A stretch of DNA of 64,000 bases, taken from positions 1 through 64,000 of the forward strand of contig CDMY01000382.1 in assembly GCA_001179505.1 (NCBI GenBank), read 5' to 3'. Below, piece after piece: positions 35,458 through 46,443 of the stretch (its first letter is position 1; each line of letters starts with the position of its first letter). Under the pieces are notes generated by a model that was given only the letters and a program-made list of their open reading frames with translations, did no database searches and had not been told where the DNA came from. The position numbers and the translations under genes were made by a program. The stretch is from Vitrella brassicaformis CCMP3155. Taxonomy: Eukaryota > Protista > Chromerida.

Positions 35458-36485
35458 CTATCTTGGCAGCTGCACTGTGTGTGTCCCCTTCTCGGCCGCC
35501 GTCTGCAGCAAAGCCGTCATGCCACTCTCACTGCTACCATCCTCATCAACCTGCAATCGGAGGGCAGCACACACATACACGCGCTCACACACGCCATCCA
35601 CACAGATGTGTGTACCTCGACAGTTGCCTGTGCCTGCTGGTTGTCGTATGCAGCGGGAGCGTCCGTGCCCTCGTCAGTGGCTCCGTCTGTCCCCTGCTCT
35701 CCCGGCAATGGGCCCAATGTGTTCTACACACACACACACACACACATGCATCCGTCTCTCTCGAGCAGGGTGTAAATGTGAAAGGGTGTGTGCGTATGTC
35801 TGTCTGACCGTGACTATTCTGTAAGTCCTGTGTGTGGGAGGTGGCGAGTACTGCAGCGGCACCAGGCGGGGCTGCGGATTGGGCTGGACGAAGGCTGTCT
35901 GGTCGACGGCCGTCCCCTGCTGCACCAGGGGGACCTGACAACAAACAACACAGTGGGATGTCACATGCCATGCGTGTCTCCTCTTGCCCTTCCCACCTCC
36001 AGATCTTCGTCTTGCTCTTGTTGCTGTCGCTGTCGCTGTCGTTGGCGTGAGGAGGAGGACATCACAAACTCACGGGCGTCGGGCACAGACGACTGCTGCA
36101 GAAACAAACAGGGAACATCTGAACACACTGACTGGAATGCTTCGGTCTCCTTGCAAGGGTACTTCCTGATCTCTGCCGTCGTCTTGTATACTCCCTCCTC
36201 CCTCCCCGCCCCTGTTGTCCCCCTTAATACGATACCCCAGGTCTTGAGCAGCCTCCCGCAGACTGCTGCTCGTCGCACTGCCTACCAGGGCCGCCTGTGG
36301 CTGCGCCATTCTGTTCTGAATACCGCGTCTCACCGGGTGAGGGGGCGATTGTCTGGGTGGGGTTAGTAGATGTGTCAGATTATGGTTGGTGGAGTCAGCC
36401 AGGATGTCAGAGATGGTCTGCTCCTCCTGAAGTCAACTCAAGATGGATCAATAAATGAGAACTGCTGTTTGCTTGTTTCCTCTCC

Positions 36486-36526
<41 letters not shown>

Positions 36527-37834
36527 TCTGGGGGGATGGGGGAAGGCACCGACGCGTGCTAGTTGCTGCTGCAGATTGAGTAGGTCTGCTTCTCGGCTGT
36601 CCAGGGCCGCCTCGCGCACCTCCAACCAGCCCTCGCGCTGCATACATAAGGATAGCCAGCCAGTGCCAGCCACAACACCACACACAGACATGACAGACGA
36701 CTTCCATGGCTTCCTCTCATTGACCTTTTCCAAGTCTTGCAGCATCCTCAGCGCCATATCGCCCCCCTCCCCCGCCCCCCGGCGCAGCTGCTGCACACCT
36801 GATGTGGCCGTTGACTTCAGACGGGCTGCCGGTGGCTGTTGTGGCTGTTGTTGTGGGTGTTCTTGTGGCTGTTGGTTCCATGCCGGCACCATGGCCGCCT
36901 CGTTCTGCTGCGGGGCCCTCTCGTACTCGGCATACTGCTGCTGGAGGCCGGCCACATATCGCTGGTAGTCACTGGGCGAGTGGGGAGCATAGACATTGCG
37001 CCGCTGCGCCAACAGGGGTAGTGGGTGGGTATTGCTCACTCGAGGCACCTTCTCCCGTGCGACAGACGAGTATATCACTGTGGCGGGCAGCCGCTGCTGA
37101 GTGGGCTGCCCTGCCGTCGCAATGGATGGGACCATTCGCCGCAGCTGGTTCAGCTGGTCATGCGACATCCTCTTCATCTTGGTCAGCACAATCCGCTGGT
37201 CCAGCCGCACAGTGTCCGCTGCATTGCTGAGGCACTGTGTGTTCCCGGGCGTCGCGTAGGCGAAGTAGTTGGACGAGTTGCCGAGGTAAGTGGCCATGTC
37301 GAGAGCCACAGAGGGCGCCTGGCCGTCAGGGAGCACCGTGCCGTAGACAGCCGGGGTGTGGTCGAGGACCATCCGCATCAGATGGCTGTCAGTCTCCCCG
37401 GCCTTGAACAGCAGCGACACCCCCAGTGTGCGGCCAGAAGTGCCCCTGTGGGCAATGACCACCTCCAGAGGGAACCGCTGAGCGCTCTCTCCCAGCGTGT
37501 GCTGCGACGGCGAATGGATATCGACGAACAGCGCTGCAAATTGCTCGCCCTTGTAGATCAGGCCCCCGAAAGAGGGCGCGGTCAGCCGCAGCCCGCTGCC
37601 GTCATTTTGCACAGCAAATAGGGTGGTTGGGGCGTAGTCGAGCACCAGCTGGCCATCCTCCGGCACAAAGGGCGGCTGGATGTTGATCGGGCCCTGCTGC
37701 ACCGAACAGCTGGAAGCCGCTTGAAGGTTGAGGTCTGCACCAGAATCTGCAAGCGCAAGGGCCGCGGGAGGAAAATGGCAAAGGGAAGCCAGCAGCAGCA
37801 GGGCCAGACGACGAACGCTGCAAGGGCTTTTCAT
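35458..37834 (-). CDS. Secreted alpha-carbonic-anhydrase-like protein (predicted catalytically inactive) with coiled-coil/Q-rich C-terminus
   Basis: Signal peptide MKSPCSVRRLALLLLASLCHFPPAALA. QGPINI (QSPINI), FVDIHSPSQHT (QFHFH..SEHT), FPLEVVIAH (YPLELHLVH), GVSLLF, YFAY...C, MSHDQLNQLR. The 3' exon chain is less certain. Confidence 0.75.
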
Positions 37835-38779
37835 CTCAAGAAGTCGCCATCCCACGACGTATCCTACGAGAGCAGCGATGTGCCGAACAATTGGTGTCGG
37901 AGAAGGCCTCTGAGTCTTCCCCGTGGATTATCAGGCCGACGGATGGTCGTAAACGATGCCCGGACCGCAAATGAAGTGCGCAGGCCGCAAACAGGCCTCA
38001 GCGATGAGTTCCTTGCCGCAGATCTTGGAGTGAGTTGGGGTAGGAGGAAAACAAGCGAGGGTGCCCTTCCTGTGTAGAGAGAATGGACACTAATGACGTT
38101 TGCACTTACAGCATGGCAGCAGTGGTCGGTCGGCACATGATGCAAAGGCAGACAGACGAACAGGCAGACATTTAGGGCAATGCGTCTTGACTCATTGGGT
38201 TGAGTAAATGCAGACGTACAGAATTTCCCTTCTGACGCACACATGACGTGCGGTCCACCCACCTTTTTCACATACCTGGCAGTACCCTTGCATGCACTAC
38301 ATCCACACACACACACACACACACACACAGCAGAGAGCAAAAAGCAGGACAAAAGAGCAAAAAGCGCCGCAGCGCGCCAAAGGGCAATGCAAAAAGTGCT
38401 GGCCCGTCTCGCCAACCAAACCACGGCATACACACATACATGCGCCTGTCATCCCTCACTTGCACCAAACTGTCTGTCTGTCCGTCTGACGCCTCCCTCT
38501 CTACTGCCGTCCCCATGGAAGAATGTGTACCATCACATAACTGTGAGCTCGGATCAGCAGCTGCCACAGCAGCGATGTCCACAGCTGCCGCCACCAATGC
38601 ACCACCTCATATTTCTGAAGAAAAGTATCCCCACAACAGAGGGACATAAGCGAATGGATTGTACGGATAGATGGACCCATGCACGCACGTATATATGCCA
38701 TTCCTTCATCATGGCCGGATGATAGATGGATGGATCGATCAATAGACGGACGGACGAATGGATGGGTGGTCTTACTTAC

Positions 38780-39493
38780 CCTGGAGCTCACGATGCGGCA
38801 CCGACTTGGTCTCGTCGAGGCGGCGGACGCCACAGCTCGTCTCGTCATAGCATTTCATTCCCCCGGGGCACTCGCCGTCGACACGTCCTGCACACAGACA
38901 GACAGACAGACAGACACACAACCAGGACAGGACAGATCGAATCGACAGGCCGTCATGCGTGCTGTGCACGCATGCAGGCGCACAAGCATCCAACCAAAGC
39001 GCTGGCTCCCCCTTACAGACATACCAGGGCACGGATTCTGACCGCACACGATGAGGCCGGGGTCGCTGGCGCAGAAGCATGTGTCGCAGGCTGCAGGCAG
39101 GCATGTCAGTCAAAGGAAGGAAGGAAAGACAGCACCCATGCATCCACGTATATATGCCATTCCTTCATCATGGCCGGATGATAGATGGATGGATCGATCA
39201 ATAGACGGACGGACGAATGGATGGGTGGTCTTACTTACCCTGGAGCTCACGATGCGGCTCGTCCCCTTGGCCCAAGCAGTCAGAGTCGCAGTCTGTCTCG
39301 CAGATGTATACGCACCCCGCCACACCGCCCTGCAGCTGCCTGTGGGCCTCTCTCTCTTGCACACCTGCAGCCAGAGGACAAATATGCCATCGTGGGTGTG
39401 TGTGTGTGTGTGTGTGTGTACCTCTCATGGCGGGATTTGCTGCTGATGCGATGGCGAGGCCATGAGGGCGACCACCGAAGTGCGAGGGGCCAT
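38780..39493 (-). pseudogene. Copy A of secreted Cys-rich RxL precursor, exon 1 frameshifted by a 10-bp deletion
   Basis: Exons 39493-about 39420, 39364-39239, 39090-39025 and 38887-38780. Relative to copy B, ttcgtcgccc is missing from the signal-peptide exon, giving MAPRTSVVALMASPSHQQQIPP*. Confidence 0.6.
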
Positions 39494-39799
39494 TGTAGCT
39501 GCACGAGGCGCTGACCAAGTGGAGTGCTGAGGGAGTCAGACGGCGCGAAGGGAAGGTGCGAGGAGTGAACACAATTAAGCTGAGGAAGGAAGGAAGGCAG
39601 GCTGCTTGAGTGAGGTCGGTGTGCGATGAATTGTTTCCGCCTTTGAGCCCCTGCTGGTGCCCTAGACAGCACGGGAGAGCACTCATGCTGTCTTATCGTG
39701 CGTTCTCGCCACAAAAACTCTCCTATCTTCGGATCGGATCACAACGGGCGAGCTTATGTGGGGAGGAAAGAGAAAAGAGGACAAGGAAGGCTGCCAGGC

Positions 39800-40099
39800 N
39801 NNNNNNNNNNNNNNNNNNNNNNNNNNNNNNNNNNNNNNNNNNNNNNNNNNNNNNNNNNNNNNNNNNNNNNNNNNNNNNNNNNNNNNNNNNNNNNNNNNNN
39901 NNNNNNNNNNNNNNNNNNNNNNNNNNNNNNNNNNNNNNNNNNNNNNNNNNNNNNNNNNNNNNNNNNNNNNNNNNNNNNNNNNNNNNNNNNNNNNNNNNNN
40001 NNNNNNNNNNNNNNNNNNNNNNNNNNNNNNNNNNNNNNNNNNNNNNNNNNNNNNNNNNNNNNNNNNNNNNNNNNNNNNNNNNNNNNNNNNNNNNNNNNN
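39800..40099. other. Assembly gap (300 N)
   Basis: Run of N from 39800 to 40099. Confidence 1.
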
Positions 40100-40641
40100 C
40101 GTGCTGTGCACGCATGCAGGCGCACAAGCATCCAACCAAAGCGCTGGCTCCCCCTTACAGACATACCAGGGCACGGATTCTGACCGCACACGATGAGGCC
40201 GGGGTCGCTGGCGCAGAAGCATGTGTCGCAGGCTGCAGGCAGGCATGTCAGTCAAAGGAAGGAAGGAAAGACAGCACCCATGCACGCACGTATATATGCC
40301 ATTCCTTCATCATGGCCGGATGATAGATGGATGGATCGATCAATAGACGGACGGACGAATGGATGGGTGGTCTTACTTACCCTGGAGCTCACGATGCGGC
40401 TCGTCCCCTTGGCCCAAGCAGTCAGAGTCGCAGTCTGCCTCGCAGATGTAGACGCACCCCGCCACACCGCCCTGCAGCTGCCTGTGGGCCTCTCTCTCCT
40501 GCACACCTGCAGCCAGAGGACAAACATACCATCGTGTGTGTGTGTGTGTGTGTGTGTACCTCTCATGGCGGGATTTGCTGCTGATGCGATGGCGAGGGCG
40601 ACGAAGGCCATGAGGGCGACCACCGAAGTGCGAGGGGCCAT
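40100..40641 (-). CDS. Copy B (intact 5' part) of secreted Cys-rich multi-peptide precursor, 3' end runs into the gap
   Basis: MAPRTSVVALMAFVALAIASAANPAMR|GVQEREAHRQLQGGVAGCVYICEADCDSDCLGQGDEPHRELQ|ACDTCFCASDPGLIVCGQNPCP|. Exon 4 taken from copy A reads GRVDGECPGGMKCYDETSCGVRRLDETKSVPHRELQ. All introns are phase 1 with canonical GT-AG. Confidence 0.75.
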
Positions 40642-41019
40642 TGTAGCTGCACGAGGCGCTGACCAAGTGGAGTGCTGAGGGAGTCAGACGGCGCGAAGGG
40701 AAGGTGCGAGGAGTGAACACAATTAAGCTGAGGAAGGAAGGAAGGCAGGCTGCTTGAGTGAGGTCGGTGTGCGATGAATTGTTTCCGCCTTTGAGCCCCT
40801 GCTGGTGCCGTAGACAGCACGGGAGAGCACTCATGCTGTCTTATCGTGCGTTCTCGCCACAAAAACTCTCCTATCTTCGGATCGGATCACAACGGGCGAG
40901 CTTATGTGGGGAGGAAAGAGAAAAGAGGACAAGGAAGGCTGCCAGGCCCTCCAGGCATATCCCGCCAGATGAGCAGCAGACACACGTGGTGCACATGACG
41001 CTCACGGCTGCCTGACGAT

Positions 41020-45522: not shown

Positions 45523-46443
45523 ATGGGAATCAAAGGTCTTTGGGATCTGGTGGCCCCGTCGGGCCGTCGTGTCAACCTGGAGGCGCTGTCCGGCTCCACT
45601 TTGGCCATCGATGCGTCCATCTGGCTGGTGCAGTTCCTCAAGGCCATGCGCGACAGCGACGGCAACATGGTCCGCAGCGCCCACCTGGTCGGCTTCTTCC
45701 GGCGCATATGCAAGCTGCTCTTCTACCAGATCAAGCCCGTCTTTGTGTTCGACGGCCCGCCGCCGGAGCTCAAGCGCCGCACACTGGCGCAGCGTCGCCG
45801 GCTGCGCGAGCAGCAGGAGGCCAACCTGAAGAAGACGGCGGAGAAGCTGCTGCTCAACAAGATGAAGTCCTACGCCCTCGACCAGATCGAGGCCAAGAGG
45901 AAGGCCAAGAGGGCCAATAAGGGCAAGGGCAAGGACAAGGGCAGCAGGGCGCGGGCGGCCTCACAGAACCAGCAGGAAGAAGAAGATGAGAACCACAGAC
46001 ATGATGATGGCGAGAATCGCGAGAACGACAAAGACGATGGTGCCGAAGGCAGGCAGCAGCGAGCCGCCAGCCCACCAGCAGCAGCGGCCGCTGCCGCGGC
46101 GGCGGCAGCAGCAGCACCAGCAGCTGCAGGGGGGCCATCCTCACCGATTGATCTGCTAGATAGCGACGAGGGGGAGCGCCAGAAGAGAGCTGCCGCCGAG
46201 GAGCTGTTTGGTGATGACGACAGCGACGTGCAGATGTGGGAGAAGGAAGATGGTGGTGAAGAGGATGGCGAGCAGGAGGGAGATGACGCCGACCCCATGG
46301 GCTACCGGGCGAGGCGACGCGCATACTACAACTCCATCCCCAACGAGTTCAGGTGCGTGCGGACCACACACACACACTTTTAGACAGTGTGTCCATACCC
46401 ATCGTCCTGTCTGTCTGTCTGTCTGGCTGGCTGGCTGGCTGGC

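What the first reader, a model, noticed from the sequence alone, without database searches (positions are those of the whole stretch)
38780..40641. Secreted Cys-rich multi-peptide precursor punctuated by RxL(Q/D) motifs: candidate peptide pheromone/toxin/effector system
Seen: splicing gives signal peptide (MAPRTSVVALMAFVALAIASA) - pro-piece - RQLQ - peptide 1 with exact CX3CX3CX3C spacing (GGVAGCVYICEADCDSDCLGQGDEPH) - RELQ - peptide 2 with 8 Cys (ACDTCFCASDPGLIVCGQNPCPGRVDGECPGGMKCYDETSCGV) - RRLDE - spacer - RELQ. That is four RxL motifs in about 130 aa, each at a module boundary. Established: apicomplexan ER/Golgi aspartyl proteases cleave after RxL (Plasmodium plasmepsin V at RxLxE/Q/D, Toxoplasma ASP5 at RRL); RRLDE fits both. 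Inference: a free-living relative of apicomplexans may use an ancestral RxL maturase to release several disulfide-rich peptides from one precursor. The CPxxxDxECPxGxxCxxxTxC part also recalls a Cys repeat common in diatom secreted proteins (from memory). The last exon is unresolved: the phase-1 acceptor at about 38615 gives ...LQEI*, and intron retention gives ...LQGK* (amidation-like).
Basis: partly seen in the sequence, partly recalled or inferred. Interest (0 to 1): 0.75.

Follow-up and report, generated by a model that had tools for sequence, protein, structure and literature searches.

The report
Duplicated algal cysteine-rich secreted-protein gene
The stretch holds two nearly identical copies, split by an assembly gap, of a young rearranged gene from a tiny Vitrella-only family of secreted cysteine-rich proteins; the family's repeated Arg-x-Leu-Gln motif is real and could be a protease cutting signal, but no cutting has been shown.

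Summary
The window is Vitrella brassicaformis CCMP3155.

The gap does not interrupt one gene. It lies between intron 3 of copy A and the promoter region of a second copy about 1% diverged (copy B).

The official annotation contains only exons 1 and 2 (CEM07998.1, 71 aa, ending ...RELQGK*). Exons 3 and 4 look coding but are unannotated and have no relative anywhere.

Two of the four RxL motifs are one 125-nt DNA repeat.

Paralogues on another scaffold (CEM14548.1) show the ancestral design: signal peptide, pro-piece, RQLQ, a CX3C-ladder helical hairpin, RRRRLQQ, a spacer, RQLQ, then a ShKT-like domain. Its last exon is read in phase 0, which exon 4 (phase 1) cannot reach. The multi-peptide layout is therefore young.

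R-x-L-Q is strongly enriched across the family. The genome encodes a plasmepsin V/ASP5-type protease. RxL-directed processing is plausible (about 30%) but untested.

Other notes of this scan flag RxL candidates elsewhere in this genome.

The parts
40642..40948 (-). Copy A: 5' upstream region and 5'UTR. It is repeated upstream of copy B and is 86% conserved upstream of the C456 paralogue.
40560..40641 (-). Copy A exon 1: an intact signal peptide (hydrophobic core, A-S-A before the predicted cut) and the start of the pro-piece. It ends in phase 1.
   Evidence: part of annotated CEM07998.1
40381..40506 (-). Copy A exon 2 (phase 1-1): pro-piece, RQLQ, one CX3CX3CX3C arm, GQGDE, then PHRELQ. The annotated model reads on into the intron and ends GK*.
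40276..40400 (-). Copy 1 of the 125-nt repeat: the PHRELQ exon end plus the first 105 nt of the intron.
40167..40232 (-). Copy A exon 3 (phase 1-1, 5 Cys). It is unannotated, and its only relative is copy B's exon 3.
39800..40099 (.). Scaffold gap between intron 3 of copy A and the upstream region of copy B. It is not inside one continuous gene.
39422..39493 (-). Copy B exon 1. A 10-bp deletion relative to copy A shifts the frame, and a stop follows after 22 codons.
39239..39364 (-). Copy B exon 2. It differs from copy A by substitutions at 3 positions, including Ala to Thr in the Cys arm.
39025..39090 (-). Copy B exon 3. Its peptide is identical to copy A's.
38780..38887 (-). Copy B exon 4 (phase 1-1): 3 Cys, RRLDE, a spacer, then PHRELQ. 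Its only other copy is at the start of scaffold C261.
38675..38799 (-). Copy 3 of the 125-nt repeat, at the end of exon 4. Copy 2 of the repeat lies at 39134-39258.
38552..38614 (-). The family's terminal exon. In phase 1 it gives EI*. In the ancestral phase 0 it encodes the last 20 residues of the ShKT-like domain. Here a 2-bp deletion breaks that frame, which is intact in C261 and C456.

Best explanation
WHAT IT IS (shown). The stretch holds two copies, about 1% diverged, of one small gene of Vitrella brassicaformis. They lie on either side of a scaffold gap.

The gene belongs to a family found only in Vitrella. The family has three loci in this assembly, plus a tail-only copy that opens scaffold C261 and one relative in an ENA assembly. 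Members are secreted cysteine-rich proteins.

The ancestral layout is kept by CEM14548.1 on scaffold C456. It runs: signal peptide, 14-residue pro-piece, RQLQ, a helix-loop-helix with four CX3C rungs on each arm, RRRRLQQ, an acidic Tyr-rich spacer, RQLQ, then a Cys-rich domain that UniProt calls ShKT. That domain's last 20 residues lie on a separate exon read in phase 0.

In the window's lineage, everything after the first arm was recently replaced. The replacement is a block bounded by a 125-nt repeat: PHRELQ plus intron, exon 3, exon 4, then PHRELQ plus intron. The result is a chimeric gene of symmetric phase-1 exons. It can only end ...LQEI* or ...LQGK* and has lost the ShKT-like domain.

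Copy B has two frame-breaking deletions (signal-peptide exon and terminal exon) and looks like a decaying copy. Copy A's tail is probably the start of scaffold C261.

HOW IT WORKS (inferred). The protein enters the ER through its signal peptide. The family-wide R-x-L-Q, 17 residues behind the signal-peptide cut, most likely marks removal of the pro-piece by an ER/Golgi endoprotease. The best candidate is the plasmepsin V/ASP5-type enzyme encoded on scaffold C688. It would cut after Leu and leave an N-terminal Gln that can cyclise.

Cutting at the further R-x-L sites between modules would separate the Cys modules. I put RxL-directed cleavage at about 0.3. I put expression of exons 3 and 4 as modelled at about 0.5.
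For: - Organism and assembly: G000 has 72,700,666 bases in 1064 scaffolds. These are the exact figures given for Vitrella CCMP3155 in PMC4501334. The protein hits are named Vitrella brassicaformis CCMP3155.
- Duplicate across the gap.
- Second tail: scaffold C261 (144,935 bp) starts in the intron-3 microsatellite. It differs from copy B by 8 substitutions in 669 bases and diverges completely after 679 bp. The heads differ by 8 in 838, a similar amount.
- Family. Nothing outside Vitrella-like sequence was found among 1.84 billion representatives, apart from one insect protein matching the C-terminal Cys-rich (ShKT-like) region of CEM14548.1 at E 2.5e-8.
- My three-exon model of the C456 paralogue equals CEM14548.1 exactly.
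- The window product is annotated as the 71-aa CEM07998.1.
- The first arm is shared. The second arm is present in CEM14548.1, P0002 and the second C456 paralogue (about 309 kb), but absent from the window.
- AlphaFold gives a helix-loop-helix for residues 41-88 of CEM14548.1 at pLDDT 75-81.
- Terminal exon: 6 synonymous and 0 non-synonymous differences between C261 and C456 in phase 0. All 6 are non-synonymous in frame +1.
- The 2-bp deletion is in the window copy only.
- The repeat copies are 98-100% identical, which indicates a young event.
- Coding look of exons 3 and 4: GC3 of 0.80-0.81, no stops, canonical splice sites, matching phases.
- Motif enrichment.
- Protease: the C688 open frame matches plasmepsin V structures 4ZL4 and 8TYF at E 4e-39, while the next aspartyl protease scores 3e-7. 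DTGS and DSG are both present.
- Precedent for RXL-punctuated multi-peptide precursors in diatoms: PMC4557024 and PMC5647440.
Against: - No transcript or peptide data were available.
- Exons 3 and 4 are absent from the published gene set and from every protein collection searched. Their reality rests on sequence features alone.
- It cannot be decided here whether copies A and B are tandem paralogues, a scaffolding mis-join or variant haplotypes.
- RQLQG and RELQA do not fit RxLxE/Q/D or RRL.
- The motif before the ShKT-like domain is lost in P0002, where DHRQLQGC reads DRCQLGSC.
- AlphaFold, at low confidence, runs a helix through the first motif.
- With the second arm gone, the four Cys of the window's first arm have no obvious partners, as would be expected for a damaged gene.
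- The second C456 paralogue needs at least two frame changes to be read through. The family therefore shows decay as well as conservation.
Confidence: 0.5

Rival explanations
1. Decaying duplicate with no processing. The locus is a recently rearranged and partly broken pair of gene copies, and its exon 3/4 block is not expressed. At most, the annotated 71-aa product is made. R-x-L-Q is a structural or inherited linker feature, for example the end of an N-terminal helix, and not a cutting site.
For: - Only exons 1 and 2 are annotated.
- Exon 4's peptide is in no predicted protein.
- Copy B has frame-breaking 10-bp and 2-bp deletions.
- Exon 4's phase cannot reach the conserved phase-0 terminal exon.
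- The partner arm of the hairpin is lost.
- The second C456 paralogue (about 309 kb) is frame-inconsistent.
- AlphaFold predicts a helix through residues 24-59, which include the motif, though at pLDDT of about 50.
- Two of the window's motifs are one DNA repeat.
Against: - Exons 3 and 4 keep open frames, 8 Cys, GC3 of about 0.8 and consensus splice sites in both copies.
- The motif precedes modules of unrelated Cys patterns in the paralogues. It is about 50-fold enriched over shuffles, which simple inheritance of one linker does not explain.
Confidence: 0.3
2. The motif is a processing site, but for a different enzyme. A site-1-protease/SKI-1-type or kexin-type subtilase would cut after the fourth residue (R-x-L-Q then cut) or after the Arg run of RRRRLQQ, rather than an aspartyl protease cutting after Leu.
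For: - From established knowledge: S1P/SKI-1 recognises R-x-hydrophobic-x and cuts after it, and plant S1P matures peptide precursors at RRxL-type sites. Furin and kexin enzymes cut after polybasic runs such as the RRRR in CEM14548.1.
- Gln at position 4 is nearly invariant. This fits a four-residue recognition site better than the three-residue R-x-L core.
- Another note of this scan reports a subtilisin gene in this genome. I did not check it.
Against: - No S1P-type subtilase was looked for or shown here.
- The position 15-17 residues behind the signal peptide, and the R and L spacing, are those of PEXEL/TEXEL.
- A clear plasmepsin V-type enzyme exists in the genome.
Confidence: 0.12
3. Pure assembly artefact. 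Only one copy exists, and the duplicate across the gap is an unmerged contig overlap from sequence variants or read errors. The true gene would then be the single chain of exons 1, 2, 3, 4 and the terminal exon, exactly.
For: - The duplicate abuts both gap edges exactly.
- The differences are a microsatellite length, one indel and 8 substitutions.
- The assembly was scaffolded from 4177 contigs with automated gap closing.
Against: - A second tail exists on the 145-kb scaffold C261. It is about as diverged (1.2%) and has entirely different downstream sequence. So at least two tails exist at different places.
- About 1% divergence is high for read error.
Confidence: 0.15

Closest known systems
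CEM14548.1 / A0A0G4FKM7 (Vitrella 'ShKT domain-containing protein', 196 aa) and its family
   Same: - Exon 1 differs in only 2 of 27 codons.
- The pro-piece and RQLQ are identical.
- It has the same first CX3CX3CX3C arm and GQGDE turn.
- The promoter region is 86% identical.
- It shares the same terminal exon.
   Different: The window gene lacks the second arm, the spacer and the in-frame ShKT-like domain. In their place it carries exons 3 and 4, which have no relative.
Plasmodium PEXEL / plasmepsin V and Toxoplasma TEXEL / ASP5 substrates
   Same: - There is a signal peptide, then R-x-L 15-17 residues behind its cleavage site.
- Some sites fit fully: RRLDE in exon 4, RRLQQ in CEM14548.1, and RELQE and RQLQE in the second C456 paralogue at about 309 kb.
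- A plasmepsin V-type enzyme is encoded in the genome.
   Different: - The organism is a free-living alga with no host cell to export into.
- The commonest forms (RQLQG, RELQA) lack E/Q/D at position 5 and lack the RRL of TEXEL.
- Gln at position 4 is conserved instead.
- There are several sites per protein.
- Cleavage is untested.
Diatom biosilica precursors (silaffin Sil1p, silacidins, cingulins) with RXL sites
   Same: A signal peptide is followed by an N-terminal RXL that ends a pro-peptide. Further RXL motifs lie at the ends of repeat units of one precursor, and these are thought to release several peptides (PMC4557024 and PMC5647440).
   Different: - The diatom units are Lys/Ser-rich or acidic and carry no Cys modules.
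- There is no sequence relationship.
- The diatom enzyme is unknown.
- The lineage is different (stramenopiles).
Plant alpha-hairpinin peptides cut from multi-module precursors (CX3C...CX3C helical hairpins; recalled from memory, not checked here)
   Same: They are disulfide-laddered helix-loop-helix modules with CX3C spacing. Several modules are released from one secreted precursor.
   Different: - The plant modules have two CX3C pairs, not four.
- No homology was detected.
- The window gene has only one arm.

Membership tests
PEXEL-type substrate (plasmepsin V) | ER signal sequence followed within about 15-30 residues by R-x-L-x-E/Q/D | tested here: not met
   The signal peptide and spacing are met: R36 and L38 follow a predicted cut after residue 21. 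But position 5 is Gly (RQLQG) in all four family members. Canonical matches occur only at later sites (RRLDE; RRLQQ).
PEXEL-type substrate (plasmepsin V) | A plasmepsin V/ASP5-clade aspartyl protease in the same organism | tested here: met
   The open frame on C688 (L026:1068-2231, minus strand) matches plasmepsin V structures 4ZL4 and 8TYF at E 4e-39, while other aspartyl proteases score 3e-7 or worse. DTGS and DSG are present. This is best-hit evidence, and no tree was built.
PEXEL-type substrate (plasmepsin V) | Demonstrated cleavage after the Leu | not testable with these tools
   This needs N-terminal proteomics or an enzyme assay.
TEXEL-type substrate (Toxoplasma ASP5) | R-R-L core | tested here: not met
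   The window has one RRL (RRLDE in exon 4). The other three sites are RQL or REL.
Diatom-type RXL multi-peptide precursor | Signal peptide, RXL ending the pro-peptide, and RXL at the ends of repeat units | tested here: inconclusive
   The pattern is present. However, the modules are unrelated to diatom units, two of the window's sites are one DNA repeat, and the precursor as modelled spans two gene copies.
ShKT domain protein | A six-Cys ShK-like domain recognised by a domain model | tested here: not met
   Pfam gives no ShK hit at E up to 10, even for CEM14548.1, and the name comes from UniProt's automatic annotation. The window gene cannot read the domain's last exon in frame.
Vitrella CEM14548.1 family (orphan secreted Cys-rich proteins) | Shared signal peptide, pro-piece with RQLQ, first CX3C arm and terminal exon | tested here: met
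   The window product CEM07998.1 matches CEM14548.1 at E 1.1e-21 with 83% identity over 64-66 residues.

The most novel reading that the evidence does not exclude
R-x-L-Q is the recognition site of the Vitrella plasmepsin V/ASP5 orthologue. On this reading, RxL-directed maturation of secreted proteins existed in the free-living photosynthetic ancestor and was later recruited for host-cell export by apicomplexan parasites. It would include removal of N-terminal pro-pieces and separation of Cys-rich modules. This orphan family would then be a ready-made natural substrate set for testing that origin.
Probability: 0.25. Interest if true: 0.75.

Novelty: new variant of a known kind. Interest (0 to 1): 0.4.

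Why it matters
If the motif is cut, it would show that the PEXEL/TEXEL processing step of malaria and Toxoplasma parasites has an older role in ordinary secretion in their algal relatives. It would also supply simple substrates (RQLQ, RELQ, RRLQQ) and a candidate enzyme (the C688 open frame) for testing this.

If the motif is not cut, the locus is an ordinary case of a fast-evolving, partly decaying orphan gene family in a badly scaffolded spot. It is also a caution that gene models spliced across gaps can join two copies.

Tried and rejected
- Pfam on each exon and on the two family proteins gave nothing, apart from a sub-threshold TIL hit at E 0.031 on the CX3C hairpin.
- Exon 4's peptide was searched in the 5.8-billion-protein collection in two length ranges and found nothing.
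- Exons 3 and 4 were searched in the whole genome and matched only their own copies.
- A full HMMER search with CEM14548.1 against 1.84 billion representatives found only P0002, CEM07998.1 and an insect protein matching its C-terminal Cys-rich (ShKT-like) region.
- The JGI metagenome scan with P0002 confirmed no relative.
- AlphaFold of CEM14548.1 was confident only for the hairpin (mean pLDDT 47). I therefore ran no fold search.
- The literature search found no report of PEXEL-like substrates in chromerids and none on ShKT in Vitrella.
In scripts I joined only the exons of the C456 paralogue, to check that they equal the deposited protein and to compute GC3.
- I rejected the reading that the gap sits inside one intron of a single gene.
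- I rejected the claim that the four motifs are four independent occurrences.
Full report
IDENTITY OF THE DNA. The window is scaffold C382 of a genome of 72,700,666 bases in 1064 scaffolds. These are the exact figures published for Vitrella brassicaformis CCMP3155 (PMC4501334). The protein matches carry that organism's name.

THE OBSERVATION.
- Exon 1 is 40641-40560. It has a basic N-terminus, a hydrophobic core and A-S-A before the predicted cut, and it ends in phase 1.
- Exon 2 is 40506-40381.
- Exon 3 is 40232-40167.
- Exon 4 is 38887-38780.
- All introns are GT..AG with good donor consensus (GTAAGT, GTATGT). Every internal exon is phase 1-1.
- GC3 in the proposed frame is 0.80-0.83. The annotated paralogue's CDS has 0.76, and intron GC is 0.47-0.57.
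- The acceptor at 38616-38615 gives ...LQEI*. Read-through gives ...LQGK*.

THE GAP, TESTED FIRST. The gap at 39800-40099 does not sit inside one gene.
- Region 40100-40948 is repeated at 38958-39799, differing by 8 substitutions in 838 bases, a 10-bp indel and a 4-bp CA-microsatellite indel.
- One edge of the gap is intron 3 of copy A. The other edge is about 300 bp upstream of the start codon of copy B.
- Copy B's exon 1 lacks 10 bases and hits a stop after 22 codons.
- A second tail (exon 4 plus the terminal exon) opens scaffold C261, which is 144,935 bp long. C261 starts in the same intron-3 microsatellite near which copy A's contig breaks off.
- C261's tail differs from copy B's by 8 substitutions in 669 bases plus four indels. 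It has unrelated sequence after 679 bp.
- The simplest reading is two real copies about 1% apart: head A with the C261 tail, and copy B. The scaffold join across the gap would then be doubtful. A tandem pair or variant haplotypes cannot be excluded.

WHAT IS ANNOTATED. A full HMMER search returned CEM07998.1 (A0A0G4F6G0, 71 aa). It is exactly exons 1 and 2 of copy A, read on into intron 2 and ending ...PHRELQGK*. Exon 4's peptide is in no protein of 25-215 aa in the 5.8-billion-protein collection. Exons 3 and 4 have no relative in the genome other than their own copies. No Pfam family matches any exon. The recalled diatom repeat is thus unsupported. I did not build or search the joined protein.

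THE FAMILY. DNA and protein searches of the genome find two paralogues on scaffold C456.
- The first paralogue (C456:87.7-88.5 kb) is CEM14548.1 (A0A0G4FKM7, 196 aa, named 'ShKT domain-containing' by UniProt). My three-exon model reproduces it exactly.
- Its layout runs: the same signal peptide and pro-piece, RQLQ, and two arms of CX3CX3CX3C joined by GQGDE. AlphaFold gives a helix-loop-helix for residues 41-88 at pLDDT 75-81, with the rest below 50.
- The layout continues with RRRRLQQ, a Tyr- and acid-rich spacer, RQLQ, and a Cys-rich domain whose last 20 residues lie on a terminal exon read in phase 0.
- The second paralogue (C456:309.1-310.2 kb) has the same start, then a 15-nt tandem repeat, RELQEC before its ShKT-like part, RQLQEGC before an extra module, and a hydrophobic tail. 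It needs at least two frame changes to be read through.
- P0002 is a 167-aa prediction from an ENA contig and is not in this assembly. It is 87% identical to the window's exon 2 over 39 residues, yet it keeps the second arm, the spacer and the ShKT-like half.
- Outside these, 1.84 billion representatives gave only an insect protein matching the C-terminal Cys-rich (ShKT-like) region. A metagenome scan gave nothing.

HOW THE WINDOW GENE AROSE. The window protein follows the family up to GQGDE and then switches to PHRELQ.
- That switch point is the start of a 125-nt repeat present three times, at 38675-38799, 39134-39258 and 40276-40400, at 98-100% identity.
- The repeat comprises the last 20 nt of exons 2 and 4 and the first 105 nt of the following introns.
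- The 3' part of the last intron and the terminal exon are homologous to those of CEM14548.1.
- So the middle of an ancestral, P0002-like gene was replaced by a repeat-bounded block carrying exons 3 and 4.
- The terminal exon of C261 and that of C456 differ at 6 codons. All 6 differences are synonymous in phase 0, and all 6 are non-synonymous in frame +1. That exon was therefore under selection in phase 0 until recently.
- Exon 4 ends in phase 1 and cannot use that frame. In copy B the frame is also broken by a 2-bp deletion.
- The multi-peptide architecture is thus young. It lacks the family's C-terminal domain and leaves the four Cys of the first arm without their partner arm.

THE MOTIF. 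Two of the window's four RxL motifs are the same DNA repeat. Across the family, however, R-x-L-Q is clearly non-random.
- CEM14548.1 has 3 occurrences against 0.055 expected, and none of 20000 shuffles reached 3.
- CEM07998.1 has 2 against 0.024 expected (P about 1.5e-4).
- P0002 has 2 against 0.046 expected.
- The first occurrence lies at residues 36-39 in every member that has a start. That places it 15-17 residues behind the predicted signal-peptide cut.
- Other occurrences lie one to three residues before the first Cys of modules with unrelated Cys patterns, or just after the hairpin.
- One position is lost in P0002.

THE ENZYME. The genome has about ten pepsin-like loci. One open frame on C688 matches plasmepsin V structures at E 4e-39, against 3e-7 for the next aspartyl protease. 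It keeps DTGS and DSG. An RxL-cutting candidate therefore exists. Orthology rests on best hits, and no tree was built.

COMPARISON WITH KNOWN SYSTEMS.
- The spacing behind the signal peptide and the R and L positions match PEXEL and TEXEL. But RQLQG and RELQA lack the position-5 E/Q/D and the RRL core. Only RRLDE, RRLQQ, RELQE and RQLQE fit fully.
- Diatom silaffin, silacidin and cingulin precursors offer a second precedent. They carry an RXL after the signal peptide and RXL at the ends of repeat units, thought to release several peptides (PMC4557024 and PMC5647440).
- A site-1-protease-type subtilase cutting after the fourth residue is a fair rival.
- I found no paper on such substrates in chromerids.
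- Other notes of this scan flag RxL candidates and a plasmepsin V-type gene elsewhere in this genome. I treat them as leads only.

VERDICT.
- The sequence features are real.
- The precursor as spliced is a chimera of two copies across a gap.
- Its four-module design is a recent and possibly non-functional rearrangement.
- The family-wide R-x-L-Q motif, together with a plasmepsin V-type enzyme, makes RxL-directed pro-piece removal a reasonable but untested idea (about 0.3).
- Nothing supports a pheromone, toxin or effector role specifically.

Noticed in passing
G000:C688:132567-133730 (L026:1068-2231, minus strand): A 388-aa open frame with DTGS and DSG motifs. Its best solved relatives by far are plasmepsin V structures 4ZL4 and 8TYF (E 4e-39). 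It is a candidate clade-D (PMV/ASP5) protease of Vitrella.
   Followed up: partly
L005:1513-2640 (G000:C456, about 309.1-310.2 kb, plus strand): A second paralogue with a 15-nt tandem repeat of about 10 units. The repeat reads SDSGG in one frame and QRLRR in another. The paralogue also has an extra RQLQEGC module and a hydrophobic C-terminal tail that resembles an anchor signal. The frames of its parts do not join without at least two shifts.
   Followed up: partly
L004:700-716 (G000:C261): Two units of the telomere-type repeat CCCTAAA lie inside the scaffold, just where C261 stops resembling the window.
   Followed up: no
P0002 (ENA contig of 5021 bp): A family member that is not in this assembly. 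It combines the window-type first arm (87% identical) with the ancestral second arm, spacer and ShKT-like half. This implies a second Vitrella-like genome or an unassembled locus.
   Followed up: partly
window 45523-46380 (+): An open frame with an XPG N-terminal nuclease domain (Pfam PF00752, E 1.5e-32). It is probably the first exon of a FEN1/XPG-family gene.
   Followed up: no
window 36407-37855 (-): A 482-aa open frame just downstream of the gene, with no Pfam match.
   Followed up: no
window 38888-38925, 40520-40559 and L004:1-20: Introns of this gene carry (GTCT)n and (CA)n microsatellites. Scaffold C261 begins inside the (GTCT)n run of intron 3, and copy A's contig ends about 45 bp before the equivalent run. 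The microsatellite probably caused the assembly trouble.
   Followed up: partly
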